Below the pieces are notes generated by a model. The model saw nothing but the letters and a program-made list of their open reading frames with translations, was not told where the DNA came from and made no database searches. From positions 62,001 through 126,000 of IMG/VR virus record IMGVR_UViG_3300037042_006844: 64,000 nucleotides of DNA. One strand, written 5' to 3'. Positions 10,191-48,473 of the stretch are shown in pieces (the first letter of the stretch is position 1; every line of letters begins with the position of its first letter). The translations under genes were made by a program, and so were the position numbers.

Positions 10191-10571
10191 TGGACGTAAC
10201 GGGAGTTGAACCCGTGTCTTTAAGAACTGTTAGCTCCGGACTACATGTGTATGCAGTTTGAATTTGTTAGGAAATGCAATCGAAACTACCAAAAATGCAC
10301 TTCTTAGGATTTGCTGTATTTCGATTGAAACCACAGATCAACTTTTTCAATCATAGTTCGTAAATGACATTTGTTTCGGCTACCGAACGATCACCGAACA
10401 AACGGACAACCTTTATTAGGCTGCAACTGCTGCGACATTCTCGTAAGAGAAGTCATAGCTCACTACATTTTCCTTAGCGGTTAATGTTTAGATAGATTTT
10501 TTAGGAAGCCAACTATCATCTTCCACATGCCCATTGCGAACGCACTCTTAAATCGAAACCAGTATACGCCC
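10191..10571 (-). ncRNA. ssrA: tmRNA, tag peptide AKENVVSYDFSYENVAAVAA*
   Basis: Acceptor GGGCGTA/TACGTCC with G3.U70, T arm GGGTTCAACTCCC, tag ORF 10478-10416 ending AA*; CCA not encoded. Confidence 0.92.
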
Positions 10572-13120: not shown

Positions 13121-13369
13121 TGACGTAGCTGTAGCCGATGTCCTGTTCTATTCCTACATTTATCTCAGCATTGCTGCTGGTTGTTCGTTAAAAACAACTG
13201 CTCCAACCTTGTCCTAATAACGTGCAGCACTACACTCGGACACTTTAGGATTACTGCTAATTTGTGGTAATAACGAGTTAAAAACTCTTCCAACATCTGC
13301 TGTGCAGCATCGAACTTCCTCTAACACTGAATGGTCAAATCCAATGCCAGCGTAGGATCGCTTGCGTCA
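13121..13369 (-). ncRNA. rnpB: RNase P RNA (compact, ~250 nt)
   Basis: P1 GACGCAAGC/GCTACGTC; GAGGAAGTTCGATG pairs with CATCGGCT (P4 with bulged U); P2 TCCTAC/GTAGGA after AGATAAAT; P3 hairpin. Confidence 0.85.
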
Positions 13370-13456
13370 AAATTAAATAATTCTTTATATAAAGGGCATC
13401 ATTGCCAATTCATATTCATATTTATATACTCAATCGGTCAACCCCGATTTGCAACA

Positions 13457-14089
13457 ATGAACACAATGAAAACCACAATGATGAAACTTGTTTTAACGAT
13501 GATGTTAACATCATTCTGTTTGGTATCAAACGGAGGCACCATTTTTGGAACCTCGCATGACCTCGGCACAAAAGGCTGGGGAACAACAGAAACATGTAAA
13601 TTTTGTCACGCGCCACATCAAAACCAAGCTGTAGCAAACGCTCCCCTTTGGAATCGCACGTTAACAGTTCAAACATATGTTCTATATGGCAGTCCTTCTT
13701 ATAAAGGAAAAGGTAATCAGCCCGGAGTAGAATCGTTGATGTGTTTGAGTTGTCACGATGGAACTGTCGCACTTGATTCTTTTGGAAACGGTGGAATCAT
13801 ACAACAAGGCACTCATATGATCGGTGAAAATCGAATGATTGGTGGTAAAGGCACCCTTGCCCACGATCATCCAATCGCATTTGCATATGATGCAGCACTA
13901 TTGGCAGAAGATAATAAACTAGTTCAGCCAGTGTCGGCAGCATTCGTTGATGCAAGCCATAATATTCCATTGTATGCAACCAAAATGGAATGTGCTTCAT
14001 GCCATGACCCGCACGATAATGGTTTCGGCAATTTTTTGCGTATGGACAATTCAGCAAGTGGATTGTGCATAAAATGCCATTTGAAATAA
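13457..14089 (+). CDS. secreted multiheme cytochrome c (doubled-CXXCH / cytochrome c3-like family)
   Basis: Signal peptide; four CXXCH (CKFCH, CLSCH, CASCH, CIKCH), CHxPH and DHPI motifs. Confidence 0.9.
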   Translation: MNTMKTTMMKLVLTMMLTSFCLVSNGGTIFGTSHDLGTKGWGTTETCKFCHAPHQNQAVANAPLWNRTLTVQTYVLYGSPSYKGKGNQPGVESLMCLSCHDGTVALDSFGNGGIIQQGTHMIGENRMIGGKGTLAHDHPIAFAYDAALLAEDNKLVQPVSAAFVDASHNIPLYATKMECASCHDPHDNGFGNFLRMDNSASGLCIKCHLK

Positions 14090-14594: not shown

Positions 14595-14668
14595 TGGCAG
14601 GGGATGAAGGAATCGAACCTTCACTAGTTGATCCAAAGTCAACTGCACTACCATTATGCAAATCCCCA
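14595..14668 (-). tRNA. tRNA-Gln(TTG)
   Basis: cloverleaf, CCA. Confidence 0.9.
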
Positions 14669-14681
14669 GTTCTAAAAAAAT

Positions 14682-14755
14682 TGGTGCGGGATGAGAGAAT
14701 TGAACTCTCCACTCAACATTGGCAATGTCGTGTTATACCGATTAACTAATCCCGC
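14682..14755 (-). tRNA. tRNA-Gly(GCC)
   Basis: cloverleaf, CCA. Confidence 0.9.
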
Positions 14756-14759
14756 ACTA

Positions 14760-14847
14760 TGGAGTGTTGTGTAGGAATCGAACCTACTCCGTGTTTTACC
14801 ACATCCGTTTTGCAGACGGCTGACTTCCCATTCGTCATCAACAACAC
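14760..14847 (-). tRNA. tRNA-Cys(GCA) with long variable arm
   Basis: ctGCAaa loop, U73, extra arm TGTGGTAAAACACG. Confidence 0.8.
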
Positions 14848-14871
14848 AAATTAAACACACCAAACTAAAAA

Positions 14872-14947
14872 TGGTGGACCTGACAGGGATCGAACCTGCT
14901 ACATTCTGCTTGCAAAGCAGACGCTCTCCCAAATGAGCTACAAGCCC
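14872..14947 (-). tRNA. tRNA-Ala(TGC)
   Basis: cloverleaf, G3.U70, CCA. Confidence 0.92.
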
Positions 14948-14953
14948 AGAAAA

Positions 14954-15047
14954 TGGCGGAAGCGAAGGGTGCTGCCCCCTTAGTCGTTTTTTAGACGACG
15001 GCAGTTTAGCAAACTGCTGTGAAAACCTAACTATTCACGTCACTTCC
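14954..15047 (-). tRNA. tRNA-Ser(GCT)
   Basis: long arm, G73, atypical T loop. Confidence 0.8.
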
Positions 15048-15053
15048 AAAAAA

Positions 15054-15143
15054 TGGCGGTATACAGAGGACTCCAACCCCAGCCCCTTGCGGGACCAATC
15101 TGATTTCGAATCAGTTCTAGCACGACTGTCTAGTTTATATACC
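15054..15143 (-). tRNA. tRNA-Ser(CGA)
   Basis: long arm, G73, CCA. Confidence 0.8.
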
Positions 15144-15171
15144 AAAAATGGCGGATGAGCCATGCTCCATA

Positions 15172-15678
15172 TTAAATTTTCTTTTCTACCGTATAACCGT
15201 TGTGTATAAGAACCTCTTTACACAATTTTATAAAATCTTCTACTAACAAATCGCCTTTTGCCATATTAGCTTCTTTACAAGCCAACCCTAAATTTGTTAT
15301 TTCACATCCACCATTTTTCGACACAGGAATAATATGGTCACAATTATAGGTTTTTGGTTCTAATAAGTCAATCTTTCTTCCTGTTAAGTAACATACAGGA
15401 GTTTCTAACACTTTCTCTTTGAATTCTTTTGAAGAAAAGACTAGATCGGCTCTTTTTCCTTTACAATTTCTATTTCCATTTATAAAACTAAAATTGTCTT
15501 TTTTCCTTTTAAGAATTCCATTTAGAGTTTTTTTATAACTCTTAAATCTAATTTTTGACTTTTCTTTTTGTCCTATACCGCAATGATATGCTATAGTTCC
15601 TTTAGAACAACCTAAAAGTTTTCGTATTTCAGCATACGATCTGCCTTCACTTCTCAATCTTAATATGTTTTCTTTCAT
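15172..15678 (-). CDS. HNH homing endonuclease with N-terminal HTH
   Basis: GRSYAEIRKLLGCSKGTI; CYLTG...DHIIPVSKNG..EITNLGLACKEANMAK. Confidence 0.85.
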   Translation of the reverse strand: MKENILRLRSEGRSYAEIRKLLGCSKGTIAYHCGIGQKEKSKIRFKSYKKTLNGILKRKKDNFSFINGNRNCKGKRADLVFSSKEFKEKVLETPVCYLTGRKIDLLEPKTYNCDHIIPVSKNGGCEITNLGLACKEANMAKGDLLVEDFIKLCKEVLIHNGYTVEKKI

Positions 15679-15750
15679 ACTAATACATATGAAAGAGTTC
15701 GAATAAAAATCAATAAAAATATTCGAACCAGTATTTTTATTTTCAAAGAG

Positions 15751-15838
15751 CGGAAGCCAAGGGAATCGAACCCCTGCCGCCTTTCGACGGTTTAGTTTTC
15801 AAGACTAACGCAGCAAACCAACATCTGACCTGACTTCC
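15751..15838 (-). tRNA. tRNA-Ser(TGA), no encoded CCA
   Basis: long arm, ctTGAaa, 3' end abuts HNH cassette. Confidence 0.85.
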
Positions 15839-15844
15839 GTAAAT

Positions 15845-15919
15845 TGGTGGAGCCTAGCGGTTACGCTCCGCTGACCTCGCATTGCAAGTGCGATGTGTTA
15901 CTATTAGCACCAAGACCCC
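15845..15919 (-). tRNA. tRNA-Ala(TGC)
   Basis: G3.U70, atypical T loop AGCGTAA. Confidence 0.8.
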
Positions 15920-15928
15920 ATTAAACTG

Positions 15929-16005
15929 TGGTGCGAACGATGGGAGTCGAACCCATACTGTAGAAATTTTAAGTTTCTTGTCTCCTTCCGTTGGACTACG
16001 TTCGC
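15929..16005 (-). tRNA. tRNA-Leu(TAA), short variable loop
   Basis: cloverleaf, CCA. Confidence 0.88.
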
Positions 16006-16011
16006 AAAAAT

Positions 16012-16089
16012 TGGTAGCATCGACTGGATTCGAACCAGCACTGTTTTCATTTTGAGTGAAACGCCTCCTTCCAATTGGGCTACGATGCC
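16012..16089 (-). tRNA. tRNA-Leu(CAA), short variable loop
   Basis: cloverleaf, CCA. Confidence 0.88.
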
Positions 16090-16092
16090 ATT

Positions 16093-16337
16093 ATGAACTA
16101 CCCACCCGCTAAAGCAAGTGGGTTTCCCCGTTGCTCTAACATTAGGGTTTCTATAGGGTAGTTCCTACCCTTTACAAACTCTGTTTTTGGAAATGAGAAG
16201 TCCAAGATATTCTTGGCCGCATTCACATCTCTATCGTGATTTGTGTTACAATTGAGAAAGTATCAAACTATTGTCAATGGGTCGCATTCATCCCAAACCC
16301 TATAGGGAATTGGGTTTTCTGCTCCCACAAAGATAAA
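16093..16337 (-). mobile_element. internally deleted IS200/IS605 element (TnpB C-terminal remnant plus both ends)
   Basis: Reads NCNTNHDRDVNAAKNIL; right end hairpin ...GGGTAGTTCAT; left end TTTAT..TGGGAGCAGAAAA. Confidence 0.8.
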
Positions 16338-16351
16338 TTACAAAAAAATCG

Positions 16352-16912
16352 TCAAAACTTTTCGAGTGTGATTACGTCCAGCCCATTTTTCCATGCGTTT
16401 AGGTAATTCTCACTTTTTTGTTTGTTCCGCATATCCCACACGGTTGTTGCACCTACGCACGGATCAATCAACTCAAGCAAACTTGGAGTCCAAGTCGGAT
16501 CAACGATGTCTTCAAGAACTAAAATACCACCAGATTTAACTTTTGGCAAGTAGTTTTTCAAAAAGAACACCATCGACTCATATGAATGAGGACCGTCGTC
16601 TATCACTATATCAAAAAAATTGTTCTGAAACAAATTCGCGGATTCAATCGTGTATCCGTCTCTTTGCATAAACGTAATTCGACTTTTGTCTACGAAATTA
16701 CAATCGTTTATGTCCATCCCATATATTTGGGCATTTGTAAAAAAATCTCTCCATGTTGTGATCGATCCGCCGCTTCCGACTCCCAACTCTAGCACGTTTG
16801 CTGTGGAGTGTTGTCTAGGAGAAAAGAGTTTATCATAAAACTCGTCATAATATCCTAAAACTTCTTTGTCGGTTCGCGGTCCTATTTGAATTGAAAACTC
16901 TTTGAATGTCAT
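16352..16912 (-). CDS. class I SAM methyltransferase (TDK...VLELGV...IDDGPH family)
   Basis: LELGVGSG, YGMDI, IDDGPH, GGILVLED. Confidence 0.85.
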   Translation of the reverse strand: MTFKEFSIQIGPRTDKEVLGYYDEFYDKLFSPRQHSTANVLELGVGSGGSITTWRDFFTNAQIYGMDINDCNFVDKSRITFMQRDGYTIESANLFQNNFFDIVIDDGPHSYESMVFFLKNYLPKVKSGGILVLEDIVDPTWTPSLLELIDPCVGATTVWDMRNKQKSENYLNAWKNGLDVITLEKF

Positions 16913-16949
16913 ATGTTCAACAATACATAGATCGTCAATAACTAAAAAG

Positions 16950-17027
16950 TGGTGGCACCGACAGGATTTGAACCCGCACATTTTCCGGTCTAAACGGAAC
17001 GTCTCCTTCCAGTTGGACTACAGTGCC
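16950..17027 (-). tRNA. tRNA-Leu(TAG), short variable loop
   Basis: cloverleaf, CCA. Confidence 0.88.
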
Positions 17028-17039
17028 TCTAGTAAAAAA

Positions 17040-17117
17040 TGGTGGTGATGACTGGATTCGAACCAGCACTGTTTACCTCCTCAAGGTAACGCCTCCTTCC
17101 AATTGGGCTACATCACC
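17040..17117 (-). tRNA. tRNA-Leu(GAG), short variable loop
   Basis: cloverleaf, CCA. Confidence 0.88.
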
Positions 17118-17127
17118 GATCTTAAAA

Positions 17128-17205
17128 TGGTCCACCCGCACAGATTTGAACTGTGGTTATTCTTGCTCCCAGGGCAAGTGCCATACCAGGCTAGGCGACG
17201 GATGG
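17128..17205 (-). tRNA. tRNA-Pro(TGG)
   Basis: cloverleaf, CCA. Confidence 0.85.
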
Positions 17206-17211
17206 AATAAA

Positions 17212-17285
17212 TGGTAGGCAGTAGTGGAGTCGAACCACTCATTTACGGATGTAAACCGAACGTTATACCGATTAACTAACCGCCC
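17212..17285 (-). tRNA. tRNA-Val(TAC)
   Basis: cloverleaf, CCA. Confidence 0.88.
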
Positions 17286-17319
17286 ACACTAAAATTGTTA
17301 ACTGTCACTACATTTCAAC

Positions 17320-17420
17320 TTTACCGCCATATGGGTTCTGCTTTCGGCATATCACCCAGTGACCGATCAAGTGTTTTGCTTTTCAGCGGGGACACCAGAG
17401 AGAGTTTCAACCCCAACCAC
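17320..17420 (-). ncRNA. conserved structured leader of tRNA array 1
   Basis: Shares TTGAAACTC and TTGATnGGTC..TGGGTG.TATGCCGAAAGCAGAACCCATA with 35568-35685. Confidence 0.6.
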
Positions 17421-17426
17421 ATATAC

Positions 17427-17454
17427 ATCTTACCATATCTCACCAACTTGTCAA
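17427..17454 (-). promoter_or_regulatory. sigma70-type promoter of tRNA array 1
   Basis: TTGACA-16 bp-TAAGAT. Confidence 0.75.
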
Positions 17455-17479
17455 CAGGCTTTTTGCAAAACATTTCAAC

Positions 17480-17614
17480 AAAAAAACCGTTGGTCATTTT
17501 AAGACCAACGGTTACTTGAGAATGTTCGGGAAAAAGCAACCATCAGCCTCAGGTCAAACTAGGTTGACCCGCGAGCACTAACAAGGATGATTGCAGACTG
17601 TTTTTCATGTTCAT
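17480..17614 (-). promoter_or_regulatory. leader-peptide attenuator 1 (MNMKNSLQSSLLVLAGQPSLT*)
   Basis: ORF 17614-17549; 15-bp antiterminator 17548-17534 with 17517-17503; terminator 17513-17480. Confidence 0.8.
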
Positions 17615-17723
17615 TAATACATATAACGAAAATTTGAAAAACGTTAAAAATTTCTGTATTTACACAACAAAAAACCGTTGGATTGCTCCAACGGTCGCGG
17701 AAATGGATTGATAATCTATTATC

Positions 17724-18428
17724 TTAGAATGTCAATCTGAGACCCGCACAATACACCAAATCGTTTTCAAACTGCTTTAGTGCAAATGCTTTAGTTGTGG
17801 TTTGCCAATTGCCATTGTCATACCAAGCAACTTCGGCGTATGGGGTAACTGTTCCCCATTTATATGCAAACGGACGAGTCAACGTTGCCTTGGCATTCAA
17901 AGCTTCGTAGTCAGTCATCTTGCCCCATTCGACTGCTGGAGTAAGAACCAGACCGAGGAAGAGTTTTTGAGCACGTTCAGCACCCACAAAATAACCATTC
18001 TGATTTAGTTCAAAATTGAATGCTCCACGAACATATGGGGTGATCCAAGGGTTCGCAATCGCCAGCTTTGCGCCAGCTTCGGTTGAATTTCCGATGCCAC
18101 TTGACACGGTTTGATGGCGCAGAACAGTTGCATCTGCACGAAACGAGATGTTGGTTGAGACTGGAAGGCTTCTGCCAAGACCCAACAACCAGTGGCTTTG
18201 ATCTTGACTGCCATTTGCCAATAGCAATCCGCTGACATACACATCAGCATACTTGAGTGATTTCACTGCACCAATTCCGGCGTATGGAGTATCGGTGGCA
18301 TAGGTAACGCCGTTAACCACGTATGCAGTTGTATAACCACCTTCGACGGCAACAGTTGCGACATCTGCCGCACGGACAATAGTTACAGCCGCCAGTAGTG
18401 TTAATACGAACAATGTTAGTTTCTTCAT
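17724..18428 (-). CDS. outer-membrane beta-barrel protein (TorF-like putative porin)
   Basis: Signal peptide, amphipathic strands, C-terminal GLRLTF. Confidence 0.75.
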   Translation of the reverse strand: MKKLTLFVLTLLAAVTIVRAADVATVAVEGGYTTAYVVNGVTYATDTPYAGIGAVKSLKYADVYVSGLLLANGSQDQSHWLLGLGRSLPVSTNISFRADATVLRHQTVSSGIGNSTEAGAKLAIANPWITPYVRGAFNFELNQNGYFVGAERAQKLFLGLVLTPAVEWGKMTDYEALNAKATLTRPFAYKWGTVTPYAEVAWYDNGNWQTTTKAFALKQFENDLVYCAGLRLTF

Positions 18429-23139: not shown

Positions 23140-23213
23140 TGGAGCCTCCAGCGGGTAACGCTCCTGCGTTTCAGCTTTACCAAAGCCGTGTAATACTTTT
23201 ATACTATGGAGGC
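23140..23213 (-). tRNA. tRNA-Thr(GGT)
   Basis: cloverleaf, atypical T loop. Confidence 0.8.
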
Positions 23214-27028: not shown

Positions 27029-28408
27029 ATGCTGATACCATTAATAATACCGCCCGCGCCTTATTTGACCAACCCAAAAGCTTTGATGCCGCTCGGGATA
27101 CTGTATGTTGCTGGTTACATCGAAAGTCAAAAAGATACTTGCGTGTTGATTGATTTGGGCGGCGTTGATGATTACGTGTCGCACACAATAAAAGAGCTTA
27201 AAAGCTTGCCGAAATTTTCTTATGTTGGCATAACCGCAACAACTGGGCAAATATATTATGTGTTGAAAATTGTAAAAGAGATTCGAAAAGAATTTCCAGA
27301 TGTGAAAATCATTGGTGGCGGACCGCATTTTACTCACGCTTGCATTGCCCATAAAAAGAATCCAACAAGAGTGCAAAAATTCGTTGACGATTTCAATCAA
27401 TATTTCGACACGTATGTTCTTGGAGACGGAGAAAAAGCATTTTATGAGGCAATGGCAACAAACAAAAAAGTTGTTGATGCAACGGCACCATCAAGTCCGT
27501 CATACATTTCCACAGAAGAATTGGTGAACCTACCGTTCCCAGCCAGACATTTGCTCGATATCAAATCATACCAATACGATTTTGGCTGCAAATCCGTGGT
27601 CACAAACAACGCCATTAGTTTGATGTCACAACGTGGATGCCCGTATGGATGCCGATTTTGTTCAAGCAGAGTGGACAGATATAGTCGGCTGATCCGAAAA
27701 TCACCAGTGGATAAAACAATAGATGAAGTCAGATTACTATATACCACTTATGGATATACGGACTTCGCATTTTATGACGATGAGTTGAATGTTCATCCAG
27801 AACTAAACTCATTTCTCACAAAATTCAAAGATATTCAAATGGAGCTTGGGGTTGAGTTTAGGTTCAGAGCGTTTTTGAAGTCCAACATTGTGACAAAAAA
27901 TCAAATGAAAGAGCTAAAAAATGCTGGCATGACTGTTGCCATCATCGGCGGCGAATCTGGTTCTGAAAGAATGCTTAAAAACATGAACAAAAAATCAACG
28001 GTTGAACAGAATACAAAATTTGTTGATTATGCCAAAGAATATGGTGTGTATGCAAAATGCATTATGTCATTGGGACATCCTGGAGAATCAGACGAAACTC
28101 TGCAAGAAACGGAAAACTGGCTGGAGAAAGTCCAACTAGCCGATGTCAATTTTACCATCATATCGTGCCTACCATCTTCATTCTATTATGATAGTGCTTT
28201 CAAAAGAGACGACGGCATTTGGGTTTATACTGTTCCAGAAACCAAAGATCGGTTATACAGTTTCGATGTGGATTTCCACTCCAAACCAAACATACTGAAT
28301 GGAAATTTGGATTATGGATACGAATCCACTGTGTATACAGACTTCTTAAAACCAGAAGATTTGGTTAAATGGCACTCTCATTTGGAGAGAAAATTCAAAC
28401 CCGCGTAA
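27029..28408 (+). CDS. B12-binding radical SAM protein
   Basis: PLGILYVAG, GGPH, GDGE, RGCPYGCRFC, ESGS. Confidence 0.92.
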   Translation: MLIPLIIPPAPYLTNPKALMPLGILYVAGYIESQKDTCVLIDLGGVDDYVSHTIKELKSLPKFSYVGITATTGQIYYVLKIVKEIRKEFPDVKIIGGGPHFTHACIAHKKNPTRVQKFVDDFNQYFDTYVLGDGEKAFYEAMATNKKVVDATAPSSPSYISTEELVNLPFPARHLLDIKSYQYDFGCKSVVTNNAISLMSQRGCPYGCRFCSSRVDRYSRLIRKSPVDKTIDEVRLLYTTYGYTDFAFYDDELNVHPELNSFLTKFKDIQMELGVEFRFRAFLKSNIVTKNQMKELKNAGMTVAIIGGESGSERMLKNMNKKSTVEQNTKFVDYAKEYGVYAKCIMSLGHPGESDETLQETENWLEKVQLADVNFTIISCLPSSFYYDSAFKRDDGIWVYTVPETKDRLYSFDVDFHSKPNILNGNLDYGYESTVYTDFLKPEDLVKWHSHLERKFKPA

Positions 28409-30768: not shown

Positions 30769-30842
30769 TGGTGGCAATGGCGGGACTTGAACCCACAACT
30801 TGTGCAGTTATCAACGCACTACTCTAATTGAGTTACATCGCC
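30769..30842 (-). tRNA. tRNA-Ile(GAT)
   Basis: cloverleaf, bulged anticodon stem. Confidence 0.72.
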
Positions 30843-33590: not shown

Positions 33591-33667
33591 TGGAGCATCG
33601 TGTGGGTAACGCTCCCACTCAGTATCTTGTTTGGAAGACAAGTGCCTCACTTCTCAGCCAACGATGC
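33591..33667 (-). tRNA. tRNA-Gly(TCC)
   Basis: cloverleaf, U73. Confidence 0.8.
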
Positions 33668-34253: not shown

Positions 34254-34853
34254 TTATTTCTTAATCACGCAAGTAAGGCTTGCGTTAAGATGAAATGTTC
34301 CATCACGATTGTAGTGATGCCGTTCACGAAATTCGCTGCGAATTGCATTCAATGCAGCATCTTGCGAATCGAGATCGTTTGCGAGAAAATCATAAGTAGT
34401 TGGCAGTCTGTCAACATACTCTGATCCCGCAGCAAAAGATGTGTGTAAATCCTCCATCACAAAATATCCATTGGGCTTAACTTTTGGCCAATAATATTTC
34501 AACGCATCTTGCTGATGTGACATGTAATGACTTCCGTCATCCATCATGATATCAATCTCGCCATCTGCAAACGTGCTGTAAACTTCTTCCAGCAAAGCGT
34601 TTTTCGTAATGTAAACAAAACGATCATGTAACGGAACCTCTGGACGATAGCCGCAATCAATTCCGTAGATGGTTGCGTTTGGAAAATATTCCAACCATGT
34701 TTGAGTGCTCGCCCCAAAATAAACACCGATTTCAACTACTTTTCGAACGTCATATCGAATCGGTCCAAAAAACTGCTCGTAAAAATCCATGTATCTGTGA
34801 CCCCAGGCTTTATCAGTCTGGTATTTTATTCCAATGTCTTGTAGTAATCCCAT
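34254..34853 (-). CDS. class I SAM methyltransferase
   Basis: TDK..H.Y, VEIGV, DDGSH, MEDL. Confidence 0.85.
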   Translation of the reverse strand: MGLLQDIGIKYQTDKAWGHRYMDFYEQFFGPIRYDVRKVVEIGVYFGASTQTWLEYFPNATIYGIDCGYRPEVPLHDRFVYITKNALLEEVYSTFADGEIDIMMDDGSHYMSHQQDALKYYWPKVKPNGYFVMEDLHTSFAAGSEYVDRLPTTYDFLANDLDSQDAALNAIRSEFRERHHYNRDGTFHLNASLTCVIKK

Positions 34854-34884: not shown

Positions 34885-35529
34885 CTATAGTTTTTCAATC
34901 ACACAAGTAATACTGCTCGGATAGTGGAACGTTCCGTCACGATTATAAAAATGTTTTGCACCAAACTCCGTGTCACGGATGTTGTTCAACTCAGCGTCTT
35001 GCGTAACGGCATTGTTTTTCAAAAAATCATAAGTGGTTGGTAATCGATCTCGATTTGCGAGCAGCCTTCGCTGTGAAGGTGGCAGACAACTTTCGGAATC
35101 TGCTCGTATGGCGGATGTGGATAAATCTTCCATCACAAAATAGCCGCCATGTTTGATCTTTGACCAGTAAAATTTAATTGCGTCGTGCTGATGTGATATT
35201 TTATGACTACCATCATCAATCAGAATATCGATGTCATTATCGGTGAATGAAGAATAAACTTCTTCCAGCAAAGCGTTTTTCGTAACGTAAACAAATCTGT
35301 CATGTGGAGAAACTAATTCGCAGTGTATGCAATCGATTCCATAAATCGTGGCGTTTGGAAAATAATCCAACCACACTCTGATACTGGAACCACGATGCAC
35401 ACCAATCTCAATAACTTTGCGGACATCAAACCGTATCGGACCAAAAAATTGTTCATAGAAATCCATGTATTTGTGATACGTGGCTTTGTCAGTTTGATAT
35501 TGCATTCCTAAATCGTGAAGTAAACCCAT
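34885..35529 (-). CDS. class I SAM methyltransferase (tandem paralog)
   Basis: Highly similar to 34254-34853. Confidence 0.85.
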   Translation of the reverse strand: MGLLHDLGMQYQTDKATYHKYMDFYEQFFGPIRFDVRKVIEIGVHRGSSIRVWLDYFPNATIYGIDCIHCELVSPHDRFVYVTKNALLEEVYSSFTDNDIDILIDDGSHKISHQHDAIKFYWSKIKHGGYFVMEDLSTSAIRADSESCLPPSQRRLLANRDRLPTTYDFLKNNAVTQDAELNNIRDTEFGAKHFYNRDGTFHYPSSITCVIEKL

Positions 35530-35567
35530 GCTGTATACATATACAGAAAATAGCGATCTCAACCGCA

Positions 35568-35685
35568 CTTTCATCGCCCTATGGGTTCTGCTTTCGGCAT
35601 AACACCCACGGACCAATCAATTGATTTTCCCAGACTTTACCTTTTTCACTGGCGGCGGCTCAACAGATGGAGTTTCAAGCCCGTT
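35568..35685 (-). ncRNA. conserved structured leader of tRNA array 2
   Basis: Second copy of 17320-17420 element. Confidence 0.6.
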
Positions 35686-35701
35686 TCTAAATTGTTCTTA
35701 C

Positions 35702-35821
35702 AGTCTATCAGCTTTTTATCACTTGTCAACTGTCTTTTTTCGCTCACCTTTCGGCTCGCTCGTTGGTCAACCTTTCGTCGCTCAACTATAATAATCTTAT
35801 CACACTTCCTATCACTGTCAA
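35702..35821 (-). promoter_or_regulatory. tandem sigma70 promoters of tRNA array 2
   Basis: TTGACA-16-TAAGAT (35821-35794) and TTGACA-16-TAGACT (35729-35702). Confidence 0.7.
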
Positions 35822-35846
35822 CGATCTTCTTTCAAAAAAATTCCAA

Positions 35847-35986
35847 CAAAAAACCGTCACTCATTTCTGGGTGACGGTTGATATTCTTTCTTCAGTTATG
35901 TATACAAAATATCAGCGTCCACCCTTTCTTGTAAAGGTGGTATTATACCAATCACGCTTAATGTCATGTTTACAAACGACTTGCAT
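35847..35986 (-). promoter_or_regulatory. leader-peptide attenuator 2 (MQVVCKHDIKRDWYNTTFTRKGGR*)
   Basis: ORF 35986-35912; protector hairpin, antiterminator over stop codon, terminator AACCGTCAC/GTGACGGTT + U tract. Confidence 0.8.
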
Positions 35987-36017
35987 ACACAAATATATAT
36001 CTGCGACTTTGCGAAAC

Positions 36018-39894: not shown

Positions 39895-40914
39895 CTATTT
39901 ATCGTTGAGCAAATAGTTGTTGCTGATTGCTTTGAAACTGAAATTCTCGGTCAATCCTCGAACGACCACACCTTCACGATCTGCGTTTGGATTCAACATG
40001 CTTTTTCCATCTGCATACGCCAACATGTTGTCCACCAAAGCCTCGGCGGGTAATACATAAGCCCACTCCATGACTGGAACCATGTTCAACTTTAACGTTT
40101 CCAATGTATCTTTCAACTCGCTCACAGTCATTCTACGACCTTCGTCGATGTAATATCCCGTAAAGAAAAACACTGTGCGTTTGGCCAATCCGTATAAATT
40201 ACCTTGAATGCCTGGACCAACCAATTCACCTTGCAACGCAATGTTTTTACGCAACTCGGTCAACTTCCCTGGCATTTGTAGTTCATTTGCTGCTTGCCAG
40301 AACGCATTTCCCTCACTGGGTTTCAATTCGAGGTTTCGGCTGCATACTCCAAACTCACCGTTGCGAAAATATGCGGTAAAACTTGAACCGTCCAATTTTT
40401 CAGTAACATATGCATTTTGCCCCCGCAAATCAATCATACAATCACTTGCATAATTCTGAATACGTTCCTCGTCGGTCTTTGGAATAAAAGAAGGAAACCA
40501 TCCCTTTACTTCTCCAGACAATTGTGCTGGACCTCCAGCTTCGTATTTTATCACGTTCAATGCCACGGTTAAATCATCTCCCTCTTTTAGATTAGGAAGG
40601 CTCCAAGGCAGCGGAGTCAATAGACCTTGAGAAATTTGTCCACACAAACGAACAGTTTTCAAACGAAATCCCTCTTGTCCATTTGCCATTTTTTTGAAGC
40701 AACGTGCTCTCAAAAATTCAAATTGCGGCATTACTGGCAAAAAACTGTCGATCTCATAATAAACAGCAAGATCGCCCACGTTAAATTCATTCTTTTTGAC
40801 AACAACTTTCCATCCCTTGACAGTTGCTACAACAATAGCGTCAGCACCAACAATGGGTTGAATGTCGAGGATTTTAACTACACTGGCTAATTTACGTTCT
40901 GGTTCCATACACAT
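39895..40914 (-). CDS. ATP-dependent RNA ligase, DRB0094/Rnl5-like family
   Basis: RKLAS N-domain, YEIDS, KTDEERIQN, TEKLDGSS, QGELVGPGIQGN, EGVV, FKAISN. Confidence 0.92.
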   Translation of the reverse strand: MCMEPERKLASVVKILDIQPIVGADAIVVATVKGWKVVVKKNEFNVGDLAVYYEIDSFLPVMPQFEFLRARCFKKMANGQEGFRLKTVRLCGQISQGLLTPLPWSLPNLKEGDDLTVALNVIKYEAGGPAQLSGEVKGWFPSFIPKTDEERIQNYASDCMIDLRGQNAYVTEKLDGSSFTAYFRNGEFGVCSRNLELKPSEGNAFWQAANELQMPGKLTELRKNIALQGELVGPGIQGNLYGLAKRTVFFFTGYYIDEGRRMTVSELKDTLETLKLNMVPVMEWAYVLPAEALVDNMLAYADGKSMLNPNADREGVVVRGLTENFSFKAISNNYLLNDK

Positions 40915-47775: not shown

Positions 47776-48402
47776 ATATATGTTCAGACCAGTTTGAAAA
47801 AAATGCCCGAATGGATCGTGGAGACAGATTACATGTTTCCGACTTCCGCGATGAGTCCCAACAGTTCATAGGGAATTAAACAGGACTCGCTAAACAGCTA
47901 AAACAACCATTATTTCCCATTGATTAGCCCATTCGGTAAATCAATTTAGCTGGCAGTAATCCATCTGGTGTATGTATTACATTTATGACGTATGGTGAAT
48001 TTCGGATTCCAGCCGAACTCAGTCCTCTAGCGTCTATTACCAGCCAAAGCCAAAAATTAAATTTGAGGATTTCACGCTTTATTCGTTCCGAATGAAGGGC
48101 TTTGACCCATATACCCCACTGGAGGGCGGGTGCTTTAGATTTAAGCTACATCGTCTATCTCAAAAAAATTGGTGGATGCTATCGTGACCCTTACGCCGGA
48201 TTTTTACCGGAGCAACATAATCTAACCCGTGGCAAAACGGAGATAACCTATGCTGCTACTCAAAGAAGGATCTGTGGTTTGCAATCACTTAGCCTTCTAA
48301 AAAATCAATATAGAGCTTTTCAACCCGCCCACTGAAGGGCTATGCTTAATCTTACATCACGCAAGGAATCACCCCTGGTGAAAGAGGCTCTATAAAATTG
48401 AA

Positions 48403-48473
48403 TGATGTCGGTGGGACTCGAACCCACATCAAGCCCTTGAACGGGCTTCTCTACCATTGAGCTACACACATCA
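48403..48473 (-). ncRNA. tRNA-like RNA, 6-nt anticodon loop, no CCA
   Basis: canonical D and T arms, arm AAGCCC-GTTCAA-GGGCTT. Confidence 0.5.

What the first reader, a model, noticed from the sequence alone, without database searches (positions are those of the whole stretch)
17480..17614. Attenuator 1 samples individual isoacceptor codons
Codons AGT CTG CAA TCA TCC TTG TTA GTG CTC GCG GGT CAA CCT include four different Leu codons (read by the array's TAG, CAA, TAA, GAG tRNAs) and three different Ser codons in 13 positions. Directly after the stop, GGCTGATGGTTGCTT can pair over all 15 nt (G.U allowed) with AAGTAACCGTTGGTC, the 5' arm of the terminator. A ribosome at the stop would mask it. 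Suggests sensing at isoacceptor level rather than amino-acid level.
Basis: partly seen in the sequence, partly recalled or inferred. Interest (0 to 1): 0.85.

Follow-up and report, generated by a model that had tools for sequence, protein, structure and literature searches.

The report
Leader-peptide attenuator before phage tRNA genes
A giant uncultured phage places a tiny translated "test" gene and a transcription stop signal in front of each of its two tRNA gene clusters, and each test gene is built from the codons that its own cluster's tRNAs read, so the phage probably senses its tRNA supply and tops it up.

Summary
The pairing beats shuffled controls (z = -3.9). An in-ORF segment can sequester the same 15-nt segment, giving a trp-like 1:2 / 2:3 / 3:4 layout.

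The module recurs in about 170 related loci from IMG/VR and metagenomes. Both alternative folds show covariation. All ORF indels are multiples of 3. A -10 box lies 4-9 nt before the ATG, which suggests a leaderless mRNA.

The leader peptides (31 distinct) are 85% L/P/V/A/Q/G/S, which are the amino acids of the downstream array's tRNAs. A paralogous module at 35986..35852 heads the other array (Thr, Arg, Asn, Tyr, His, Ile, Lys, Asp, Phe), and its leader is made of those residues.

I conclude these are ribosome-mediated attenuators that sense decoding capacity for the codons their arrays serve. One caveat is that a conserved sigma70-type promoter sits between the terminator and the array, so attenuation can only modulate an upstream promoter's contribution. 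I found no precedent in the searchable literature.

The parts
17673..17696 (-). Terminator T0 of the upstream 234-aa gene (18428..17724). It isolates the leader unit from upstream transcription. Its arms resemble those of T1.
   Evidence: Terminator scan; motif CCAACGGTTTTTT occurs exactly twice in the window.
17616..17621 (-). P1 -10-like box TGTATT, 7 nt before the ATG at 17608. This implies a leaderless or nearly leaderless leader mRNA (inferred; the transcription start is not mapped).
   Evidence: A TATATT/TGTATT box 4-9 nt before the ATG is conserved in both leader families, often with TTGATT/TTGACN 17 nt upstream.
17549..17608 (-). Codons 4-18 encode only S, L, Q, V, A, G and P.
   Evidence: Homologous ORFs in 31 distinct peptide versions. 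All ORF indels are multiples of 3. The composition signal is frame-specific.
17586..17594 (-). Region 1 (GCAAUCAUC, codons 5-8). It pairs with GAUGGUUGC of region 2 and acts as the anti-antiterminator.
   Evidence: MFE folds, (-8.9 kcal/mol alone). The equivalent helix in relatives is 97% paired with a UA/AU covarying pair.
17551..17570 (-). Hairpin B (GGGUCAA...UUGACCU) at the end of the ORF, reaching the first base of the stop codon. It may act as a pause or spacer hairpin.
   Evidence: -8.1 kcal/mol. The equivalent hairpin covaries in relatives (CG/UA/GC at one pair).
17534..17548 (-). Region 2, the antiterminator strand GGCUGAUGGUUGCUU, immediately after the stop TGA (17551..17549).
   Evidence: It is masked by a ribosome at the stop codon. 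In relatives it is a wobble-weakened copy of the terminator 3' arm.
17503..17517 (-). Region 3, AAGUAACCGUUGGUC, which contains the 5' arm of the terminator.
17479..17513 (-). Intrinsic terminator T1: 11-bp stem (6 G-C pairs), 7-nt loop and a 7-U tract.
   Evidence: -18.0 kcal/mol. Conserved position in all relatives.
17427..17454 (-). P2: sigma70-type promoter TTGACA-16-(TGg)TAAGAT, lying between the terminator and the array.
   Evidence: The same TTGACN...TGnTAnnnT element follows the T-run in 67 of 76 distinct modules.
17323..17414 (-). Conserved structured RNA of unknown class between P2 and the first tRNA. It is part of the regulated transcript.
   Evidence: Conserved in about 170 loci. 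Covarying helices. No Rfam match at E <= 10.
14595..17285 (-). Regulated tRNA array 1: Val(tac), Pro(tgg), Leu(gag), Leu(tag), methyltransferase ORF, Leu(caa), Leu(taa), Ala(tgc), HNH ORF, Ala(tgc), Cys(gca), Gly(gcc), Gln(ttg).
35852..35997 (-). Paralogous second attenuator, used as supporting evidence. Its parts are:
- -10 box TATATT, 35997..35992
- leader MQVVCKHDIKRDWYNTTFTRKGGR*, 35986..35912
- region 1 CCACCUUU, 35940..35933
- region 2, 35927..35908
- region 3, 35885..35869
- terminator, 35879..35852
   Evidence: It has 13 distinct homologous leaders. The 2:3 duplex has p <= 0.003 in 20 of 20 modules.
35573..35821 (-). Downstream part of module 2: two TTGACA promoters (35821..35794 and 35729..35702) and a paralogue of the conserved RNA (35682..35573). 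Two methyltransferase genes follow, then array 2 (34187 downwards).

Best explanation
The element is a ribosome-mediated (leader-peptide) transcription attenuator placed ahead of tRNA array 1 of an uncultured 304-kb phage.

Proposed mechanism:
1. A promoter-like element (P1) starts a transcript at or within a few nucleotides of the ATG at 17608, so the leader mRNA is probably leaderless.
2. A ribosome translates 19 codons. Codons 4-18 call only for Ser, Leu, Gln, Val, Ala, Gly and Pro, the amino acids served by the tRNAs of the downstream array in this phage lineage.
3. If all these codons are decoded quickly, the ribosome reaches the stop codon and covers region 2 (17548..17534). Once the ribosome has left, region 1 (17594..17586) can re-pair with region 2. 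Either way the terminator 3:4 forms, and the P1 transcript ends at about 17480.
4. If any of these codons is decoded slowly, the ribosome stalls over region 1. Region 2 then pairs with region 3, the terminator cannot form, and RNA polymerase reads on through P2, the conserved RNA and the tRNA genes.

The result would be a multi-codon, negative-feedback top-up of tRNA transcription, added to the basal transcription from P2. A second module of the same design, with a leader made of the complementary set of amino acids, would control array 2.

Shown by computation:
- the sequence features and the alternative pairings, with their covariation
- conservation of the reading frame
- the match between leader composition and array content, in two paralogous families.

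Inferred only:
- that the ORF is translated
- the transcription start
- that stalling causes read-through
- that the sensed variable is the supply of the phage's own tRNAs.
For: Anatomy
- The ORF, the stop codon abutting region 2, and the terminator are all present.
- The 2:3 duplex is -19.0 kcal/mol, z = -3.9.

Energetics
- With region 1 free, 1:2 + B + 3:4 is -34.9 against -25.0 for B + 2:3, so the terminator wins.
- With region 1 covered, B + 3:4 is -26.1 against -25.0 for B + 2:3. These are nearly equal, so a pre-formed antiterminator can persist.
- With the ribosome A site on codons 2-16, all 11 arm nucleotides are paired upstream before region 4 is made. With the A site on the stop codon, only 4 of 11 are.

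Conservation
- The same order (P1, short ORF, terminator, P2, conserved RNA, tRNA-Val...) appears in relatives at 44-65% protein identity.
- It is found in 173 modules from IMG/VR and metagenomes.

Coding
- The ATG and stop are kept in 44 distinct peptides.
- ORF indels are multiples of 3.
- In several phages the leader tail is fused in frame to a longer ORF.
- The composition signal exists only in frame 0 (85% against 41% and 35%).

Covariation
- The terminated fold is 90.6% paired, with 38 double-change cells against 12.7 in shuffles (0 of 500 shuffles reach it).
- The antiterminator is 86.6% paired against 31-49% when the partner is slid, with 10 double-change cells against 2.6 (0 of 500).
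- Region 2 fits its own terminator arm better than arms of other families: -15.0 against -10.7 +/- 0.9 kcal/mol, P = 5e-5.

Leader-array match
- 52 distinct arrays behind family-1 leaders contain essentially only Leu, Pro, Val, Ala, Gln, Gly and Ser tRNAs. Nine arrays behind family-2 leaders contain Arg, Thr, Asn, Trp, Tyr, Ile, Lys, Glu, His, Asp and Phe.
- Family-1 leaders are 85% L/P/V/A/Q/G/S (bulk 43%). Family-2 leaders are 72% R/T/N/W/Y/I/K/E/H/D/F.
- For the two leaders of this window alone, Fisher P = 3.3e-4.
- The own-set fraction is 0.94 in the middle of family-1 leaders, against 0.40 at residues 2-3 and 0.66 at the last two. That is where a stall would act.
- One alignment column holds six different residues, all from the array set.
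- A divergent relative (L104) has a 43-residue leader with all 20 amino acids (P = 0.014).
Against: - A well-conserved sigma70-type promoter (P2, 17454..17427) lies between the terminator and the array, here and in 67 of 76 distinct modules. The array therefore does not depend on read-through, and the size of any attenuation effect is unknown.
- At equilibrium the full-length leader folds into the terminator at every modelled stall position (P about 0.8-0.98). Anti-termination would have to be kinetic. From my memory, the same is true of trp.
- There is no Shine-Dalgarno sequence. Translation rests on an inferred leaderless start.
- Each codon occurs only 1-4 times, not in the long runs seen in his, leu or phe leaders.
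- The window's array has no Ser tRNA although 4 of 18 leader codons are Ser. The leader does not track recent gains and losses of single tRNA genes.
- In the commonest clade the 2:3 duplex is only modestly better than shuffles (median z about -2).
- The main family-2 clade shows no significant 1:2 pairing.
- Some relatives have lost the leader or replaced it with a 60-90-codon ORF.
- There are no expression data, no cultured relative, and the host is unknown.
Confidence: 0.65

Rival explanations
1. The attenuator is real, but it senses the host's amino-acid or aminoacylation state (general charged-tRNA availability or starvation), not the supply of the phage's own tRNAs. It would couple the P1 contribution to host physiology.
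For: - A ribosome cannot tell phage tRNAs from host tRNAs and reads only aminoacyl-tRNA availability. This follows from established knowledge of attenuation.
- The leader keeps four Ser codons although the window has no Ser tRNA.
- The codon-level match given the amino acid is weak.
Against: Two paralogous leaders split the amino acids exactly as the two arrays split the tRNAs. A general starvation sensor has no reason to do that.
Confidence: 0.15
2. One reading: the leader is tuned to individual isoacceptors, with one codon per tRNA species of the array, rather than to amino acids.
For: - In the window, CTG, TTG, TTA and CTC match anticodons tag, caa, taa and gag.
- L002 lacks both tRNA-Leu(taa) and the TTA codon.
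Against: - Four Leu codons among five has P = 0.31 under bulk usage.
- Pooled codon match given the amino acid is 73% against 66.5% expected.
- L005-type leaders use TTA and CTC without taa or gag tRNAs in their arrays.
- Ser codons have no Ser tRNA in this window.
Confidence: 0.08
3. P1-ORF-T1 is an independent small gene, either a micropeptide or a small RNA with its own terminator. The terminator mainly insulates P2 from upstream transcription, and there is no regulatory read-through.
For: - The unit has its own promoter-like box and a strong terminator, and it is followed by a separate promoter.
- At equilibrium the terminator always wins.
Against: - Peptide sequences vary freely within the array's amino-acid set (for example L/Q/P/A/V/S at one position), which is unlike a functional peptide.
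- Region 2 covaries with the terminator arm, which a plain terminator does not need.
- Two families have complementary compositions that match their arrays.
Confidence: 0.08
4. The ORF is a chance ORF, and the hairpin is simply the terminator of the upstream gene.
For: Short ORFs are abundant in any intergenic region.
Against: - The upstream gene has its own terminator, T0.
- The ORF, its frame, its stop position and its composition are conserved across about 170 loci.
Confidence: 0.02

Closest known systems
Classical leader-peptide attenuators of enterobacterial amino-acid operons (trpL, hisL, leuL, pheL; the multivalent thrL and ilvL). Recalled from established knowledge, not tested here.
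   Same: - A short ORF whose codons report the availability of specific charged tRNAs.
- Four segments forming 1:2, 2:3 and 3:4.
- A stop codon placed so that a terminating ribosome masks region 2.
- An intrinsic terminator.
- Sampling of several amino acids, as in thrL and ilvL.
   Different: - The genes downstream are tRNA genes, not biosynthetic enzymes.
- 7-12 or more amino acids are sampled once to a few times each, instead of runs of one to three.
- The mRNA is probably leaderless.
- A strong promoter lies downstream of the terminator.
- The elements are phage-encoded and occur as two paralogous copies with complementary leaders.
pheM-pheST attenuator of E. coli, a leader peptide controlling a component of the translation apparatus. 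Recalled from memory.
   Same: Ribosome-mediated attenuation that feeds back on the decoding machinery for the very codons in the leader.
   Different: It regulates an aminoacyl-tRNA synthetase for one amino acid. Here the products are the tRNAs themselves, for many amino acids.
Leaderless polycysteine short ORFs acting as Cys-responsive attenuators in mycobacteria (bioRxiv 10.1101/834739; found).
   Same: A short regulatory ORF that begins at the 5' end of the transcript, has no Shine-Dalgarno sequence, and controls downstream operon expression through ribosome stalling.
   Different: Those have single-amino-acid (Cys) runs, control cysteine metabolism genes, and are cellular rather than phage-encoded.
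T-box riboswitches
   Same: They sense tRNA status and switch between a terminator and an antiterminator.
   Different: T-boxes bind uncharged tRNA directly, need no translation, and regulate synthetase and amino-acid genes. No T-box model matched here.
Tandem P1/P2 promoters of rRNA-tRNA operons in E. coli (PMC5179076, listed; the P1/P2 behaviour is from memory).
   Same: Stable-RNA genes driven by two promoters in series, one regulated and one more constitutive.
   Different: Regulation there acts on initiation (ppGpp/DksA, Fis). No leader peptide or terminator lies between the two promoters.

Membership tests
Ribosome-mediated (leader-peptide) transcription attenuator | Short ORF in the 5' leader, upstream of an intrinsic terminator | tested here: met
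   ORF 17608..17549; terminator 17513..17485 with a U7 tract. Conserved in relatives.
Ribosome-mediated (leader-peptide) transcription attenuator | Antiterminator (2:3) mutually exclusive with the terminator (3:4) | tested here: met
   15-bp 2:3 pairing at -16.9 kcal/mol against -18.0 for 3:4; z = -3.9 against shuffles. Covariation in relatives. Swap test P = 5e-5.
Ribosome-mediated (leader-peptide) transcription attenuator | Anti-antiterminator (1:2) with region 1 inside the ORF | tested here: met
   GCAAUCAUC/GAUGGUUGC appears in the MFE fold. The helix is 97% paired with one covarying pair in 32 relatives. It is not significant in the main family-2 clade.
Ribosome-mediated (leader-peptide) transcription attenuator | Stop codon positioned so that a terminating ribosome covers region 2 | tested here: met
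   Region 2 starts 0-7 nt after the stop, or overlaps the last codons, in all families. Footprint model for the window.
Ribosome-mediated (leader-peptide) transcription attenuator | Leader codons correspond to the product of the regulated genes | tested here: met
   Family-1 leaders are 85% L/P/V/A/Q/G/S and their arrays carry those tRNAs. Family 2 is complementary. Window-only Fisher P = 3.3e-4.
Ribosome-mediated (leader-peptide) transcription attenuator | The ORF is translated, and translation changes termination efficiency | not testable with these tools
   The evidence is indirect only: frame conservation, indels in multiples of 3, frame-specific composition, and in-frame fusions.
Ribosome-mediated (leader-peptide) transcription attenuator | The terminator lies between the only promoter and the regulated genes | tested here: not met
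   A conserved sigma70-type promoter, P2, follows the terminator. Attenuation can therefore govern only the P1-derived share of transcription. This is not a strict defining feature, because internal promoters exist in known attenuated operons (from memory).
T-box riboswitch | Stem I with specifier loop, and a T-box antiterminator bulge that matches Rfam RF00230 | tested here: not met
   No T-box hit at gathering score in the window, nor at E <= 10 in 17250..17750.
Plain intrinsic terminator of the upstream gene | The hairpin follows the upstream coding gene directly, with no conserved elements between | tested here: not met
   The upstream gene has its own terminator T0 (17696..17673). About 160 nt with a conserved promoter box and ORF lie between T0 and T1.

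The most novel reading that the evidence does not exclude
Large phages run closed-loop control of their own tRNA supply. Each tRNA array is preceded by a leaderless 'test' ORF assembled from the codons that the array's tRNAs read. A shortage of any one of 7-12 or more tRNA species would stall the test ribosome and open a terminator, boosting transcription of the whole array. Such a shortage could come from a mismatch with host codon usage, from host shut-off, or from tRNA-cleaving host defences. That would make the system an inducible tRNA replacement and counter-defence circuit, and the first case of leader-peptide attenuation governing tRNA genes.
Probability: 0.5. Interest if true: 0.9.

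Novelty: new variant of a known kind. Interest (0 to 1): 0.85.

Why it matters
Phage tRNA arrays are usually discussed as passive codon-usage supplements or as replacements for tRNAs destroyed by host defences. How their expression is controlled is largely unknown. Here the sequence and comparative evidence points to a sensor that reads decoding capacity for the codons each array serves. The phage appears to reuse the attenuation logic known from amino-acid operons, but for many amino acids at once and on a leaderless mRNA.

If confirmed, this would:
- extend leader-peptide attenuation to stable-RNA genes and to viruses;
- give a simple experimental handle on when and why phages need their own tRNAs, using two small cassettes with predicted, non-overlapping specificities;
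- provide compact natural sensors of tRNA availability for many codons.

Tried and rejected
- Isoacceptor-level design. I tested Leu and Ser codon diversity against bulk usage (P = 0.31 and 0.82) and codon match given the amino acid (292/401 against 267 expected). The claim is not supported.
- Known RNA families. An Rfam scan of the window at gathering score, and of 17250..17750 at E <= 10, gave only tRNAs, the tmRNA and noise. There is no T-box, riboswitch or known leader family.
- A remembered E. coli precedent. I recalled a leader-peptide attenuator before tRNA-Phe gene pheV. The roughly 105 nt upstream of pheV in MG1655 show no leader ORF or terminator, so I dropped the idea. The pheU sequence was not read.
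- Literature. Seven searches found no report of attenuation of phage or cellular tRNA arrays. They did find the mycobacterial leaderless attenuators.
- Cultured relatives. Megablast and blastn against 50,697 phage records gave no match. The RNA-ligase neighbour hits cyanophages and others at under 50% identity, so the host stays unknown.
- Relatives of the protein upstream of module 2. Only the source contig itself was found.
- First version of the 2:3 test. Too narrow a region-2 window wrongly gave no signal for family 2. I corrected this.
- A joint alignment of the window clade and the L003 clade (A1) put region 2 out of register between subclades. I therefore did not use it for pair counts and used the per-sequence duplex test and the swap test instead.
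- Equilibrium modelling of stalled ribosomes does not by itself predict anti-termination, so the argument rests on co-transcriptional order and on the energy balance.
Full report
SOURCE AND ORIENTATION

The window is part of IMGVR_UViG_3300037042_006844, a 303,564-bp viral contig. It carries 33 or more tRNA genes and a tmRNA, all on the minus strand. No cultured phage in a 50,697-record collection resembles it at the DNA level. All features below are on the minus strand.

THE OBSERVATION

- GGCTGATGGTTGCTT (17548..17534) follows the stop TGA (17551..17549) directly.
- It can pair over 15 nt (10 Watson-Crick, 5 G.U) with AAGTAACCGTTGGTC (17517..17503). That segment includes the whole 5' arm of a textbook intrinsic terminator: 11-bp stem, 7-nt loop, U7 tract (17513..17485).
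- The duplex is -19.0 kcal/mol. None of 300 shuffles of the region-2 window does as well (z = -3.9).
This pairing appears in the minimum-free-energy fold, so the locus has the full 1:2 / 2:3 / 3:4 layout of a trp-type attenuator.

ANATOMY OF THE LOCUS, 5' TO 3'

1. A 234-aa gene (18428..17724).
2. Its terminator T0 (17696..17673).
3. A -10-like box TGTATT (17621..17616).
4. The leader ORF.
5. Hairpin B (17570..17551).
6. Region 2, then region 3 and terminator T1.
7. A near-consensus sigma70-type promoter P2 (TTGACA-16-TGgTAAGAT, 17454..17427).
8. A conserved RNA of about 92 nt (17414..17323).
9. tRNA array 1 (17285..14595): Val, Pro, four Leu, two Ala, Cys, Gly and Gln. A methyltransferase ORF and an HNH ORF are inserted in it.

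CONSERVATION

- Relatives found through the 234-aa protein (44-65% identity) all have a short ORF, terminator and TTGACA promoter upstream of a Val-Pro-Leu... array.
Most are from freshwater lakes.
- Together these contain 173 modules. There are 31 distinct leader peptides of the type in this finding (family 1) and 13 of a second type (family 2).
- Start and stop codons are kept throughout, and all ORF indels in the alignment of the window's clade are multiples of 3.
- In several phages the leader's C-terminal half is fused in frame to a 60-90-codon ORF.
- A TATATT/TGTATT box lies 4-9 nt before the ATG in both families, often with TTGATT/TTGACN 17 nt upstream. The mRNA is therefore probably leaderless or nearly so, which explains the missing Shine-Dalgarno sequence.
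- By this alignment the window's start codon is the second ATG (17608), giving the peptide MKNSLQSSLLVLAGQPSLT.

THE SECOND MODULE

The window contains a paralogous module at about 35997..35573.
- Its leader is MQVVCKHDIKRDWYNTTFTRKGGR.
- Region 1 is CCACCUUU, and region 2 overlaps the last codons and the stop.
- It has a terminator (35879..35852), two TTGACA promoters and a paralogue of the conserved RNA.
- Two methyltransferase genes follow, then array 2 (Thr, Glu, Arg, Gly, Asp, Asn, Asn, Tyr, His, Ile, Phe...).

LEADER COMPOSITION MATCHES THE ARRAY

- The 52 distinct arrays behind family-1 leaders contain essentially only Leu, Pro, Val, Ala, Gln, Gly and Ser tRNAs. The nine behind family-2 leaders contain Arg, Thr, Asn, Trp, Tyr, Ile, Lys, Glu, His, Asp and Phe.
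- Family-1 leaders are 85% L/P/V/A/Q/G/S, against 43% in bulk genes.
- Family-2 leaders are 72% R/T/N/W/Y/I/K/E/H/D/F. The rest is mostly V, G and C. In relatives, Val and Cys tRNA genes lie in the cluster that precedes module 1, consistent with the distal end of array 2, and a Gly(tcc) gene lies in array 2 of this window.
- For the two leaders of this window alone, the 2x2 table (15/3 against 5/17) gives Fisher P = 3.3e-4.
- The signal is confined to the reading frame: 85% against 41% and 35% in the other frames for family 1, and 71% against 49% and 47% for family 2.
- The signal is concentrated in the middle of the ORF: 0.94 there, against 0.40 at residues 2-3 and 0.66 at the last two. That is where a stalled ribosome would cover region 1 while leaving region 2 free.
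- Substitutions ignore chemistry but stay in the set. One column holds L, Q, P, A, V and S.
- A divergent relative (L104) has a 43-residue leader with all 20 amino acids (P = 0.014), the same overlap of region 2 with the stop, and then a Trp-Lys-Ile-Lys array.

RNA STRUCTURE

- On 32 family-1 sequences the terminated fold (1:2, hairpin B, 3:4) is 90.6% paired, against 28-49% for slid partners. It has 38 double-change cells against 12.7 +/- 2.7 in shuffles (0 of 500).
- The mutually exclusive antiterminator is 86.6% paired against 31-49% for slid partners, with 10 double-change cells against 2.6 (0 of 500).
- Across families with different terminator stems (AACCGUUGGUC, AACCCGUCAUC, AACCCACCAAUC, AACCCCACCUAUC, AACCGUCAC...), region 2 changes in step. 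Its own arm gives -15.0 kcal/mol against -10.7 +/- 0.9 for swapped arms (P = 5e-5).
- In the window's clade, region 2 is a wobble-weakened copy of the terminator's 3' arm. All five variable positions are A-to-G or C-to-U changes that keep pairing.
- In family 2, the 2:3 duplex beats all shuffles in 20 of 20 modules (median z -5.7).

ENERGETICS OF THE WINDOW'S LEADER

| Structure | kcal/mol |
|---|---|
| 1:2 | -8.9 |
| Hairpin B | -8.1 |
| 2:3 | -16.9 |
| 3:4 | -18.0 |

- With region 1 free, 1:2 + B + 3:4 (-34.9) beats B + 2:3 (-25.0) by 10 kcal/mol.
- With region 1 covered by a ribosome, the choice is B + 3:4 (-26.1) against B + 2:3 (-25.0). These are nearly equal, so an antiterminator formed first can hold.
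- With the ribosome on the stop codon, region 2 is masked.

This is the behaviour expected of a classical attenuator. It rests on thermodynamic models, not on experiment.

THE ISOACCEPTOR CLAIM

- Four distinct Leu codons among five, and three Ser codons among four, are unremarkable for this genome's codon usage (P = 0.31 and 0.82).
- Given the amino acid, leader codons are only slightly more often directly decodable by the array's anticodons than expected (292/401 against 267).
- The window has no Ser tRNA.
- Leaders of relatives use TTA and CTC without the matching Leu tRNAs.

A ribosome necessarily senses codon by codon, but nothing shows selection at the synonymous level.

CAVEATS

- P2 lies between terminator and array, here and in 67 of 76 distinct modules. 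Attenuation can therefore only add P1-derived transcripts to a basal P2 level.
- Equilibrium folding favours the terminator at all stall positions.
- 2:3 is only modestly significant in the commonest clade, and 1:2 is absent from the main family-2 clade. There the simpler rule [quoted passage not shown] would apply.
- Some relatives have lost or lengthened the leader.
- Translation, the transcription start and the regulatory effect are all inferred.

COMPARISON WITH WHAT IS KNOWN

- The design is that of enterobacterial leader-peptide attenuators, closest to the multivalent thrL and ilvL. In target logic it is closest to pheM-pheST (from memory).
- Leaderless attenuator ORFs are known in mycobacteria (10.1101/834739).
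- It is not a T-box.
- Seven literature searches found no attenuator in front of tRNA genes, in phages or cells.
- A precedent I remembered for E. coli pheV is not borne out by the sequence.

I therefore rate it a new variant of a known kind: a known mechanism with a new regulated product, a new many-codon leader design, and a new (viral) setting.

VERDICT

- The attenuator interpretation is well supported by comparative evidence.
- The isoacceptor refinement is not supported.
- The function is most likely feedback control of tRNA-array transcription by decoding capacity (confidence about 0.65).

Noticed in passing
window 35852..35997 (minus strand), continuing to 35573: A second, paralogous leader-terminator-promoter module heads tRNA array 2. 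Its leader (MQVVCKHDIKRDWYNTTFTRKGGR) is built from the amino acids of that array.
   Followed up: yes
window 17323..17414 and 35573..35682 (minus strand); about 170 related loci: A conserved structured RNA of about 92-110 nt lies directly after the P2 promoters and before the tRNAs.
- Its helices covary: GGGS/SCCC, AUCG/CGAU, UGGGU/ACCCA, and a terminal hairpin.
- By eye there is a covarying pseudoknot between AUCUG[G/A/U]UG and CA[C/U/A]UUGAU.
- It has no Rfam match.
Its function is unknown. It could be a processing signal or a cis-acting antitermination RNA.
   Followed up: partly
window 17673..17696 vs 17485..17513: The upstream gene's terminator T0 shares its arm sequences (ACCGTTGG / CCAACGGTTTTTTGTTG) with the attenuator's terminator T1. 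The relative L002 has a different T0, so this may be a local duplication.
   Followed up: no
window 16352..16981, 34885..35616, 34254..34853, 15172..15678 (minus strand): Three Methyltransf_24/FtsJ-like methyltransferase genes and an HNH endonuclease gene are interspersed among the tRNA genes. The methyltransferases may be RNA-modifying enzymes co-transcribed with the arrays. The HNH gene may explain rearrangement of array 1.
   Followed up: partly
window array 1 (14595..17285) vs relatives L002, L003, L005: Relatives carry Ser(tga), Ser(gct) and Ser(gga) tRNAs in this array. The window has no Ser tRNA anywhere, yet its leader keeps four Ser codons.
   Followed up: partly
window 30769..30842 and 48402..48473 (minus strand): Two tRNA-like genes have abnormal anticodon loops. 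ARAGORN reports a four-base anticodon 'gata' for one and a two-base 'tc' for the other. The first might be a frameshift-suppressor-type tRNA.
   Followed up: no
window 33594..33667, 23143..23213, 15848..15919 (minus strand): Several tRNAs were found only by Rfam. They share an unusual T-arm (GGAGCGTTACCC...) and were assigned Gly(tcc), Thr(ggt) and Ala(tgc) with relaxed ARAGORN settings.
   Followed up: partly
window 13331..14089 (+ strand): A 252-aa ORF with several CXXCH haem-binding motifs (Paired_CXXCH_1 and cytochrome c7-like hits). This is a multihaem cytochrome gene in a phage genome, on the strand opposite to the tRNA region.
   Followed up: no
window 10191..10571 (minus strand): A phage-encoded tmRNA with tag peptide AKENVVSYDFSYENVAAVAA. 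Relatives carry it too, with similar tags.
   Followed up: no
window 39895..40914 (minus strand) and 27029..28408 (+ strand): An RNA ligase gene (PHA02142 OB-fold plus RNA_ligase domains), whose best matches are in cyanophages at under 50% identity, and a B12-binding radical SAM enzyme gene lie near the tRNA arrays. The ligase may serve tRNA repair.
   Followed up: partly
loci L035, L081, L161, L183, L133; L101/L163; L104: Variants of the leader occur in relatives.
- In some, the leader tail is fused in frame to a 60-90-codon ORF. In L081 this ORF carries tandem VTVSQP repeats.
- In L101/L163 the leader is lost while region 2 and the terminator are kept.
- L104 has a 43-residue leader containing all 20 amino acids.
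   Followed up: partly
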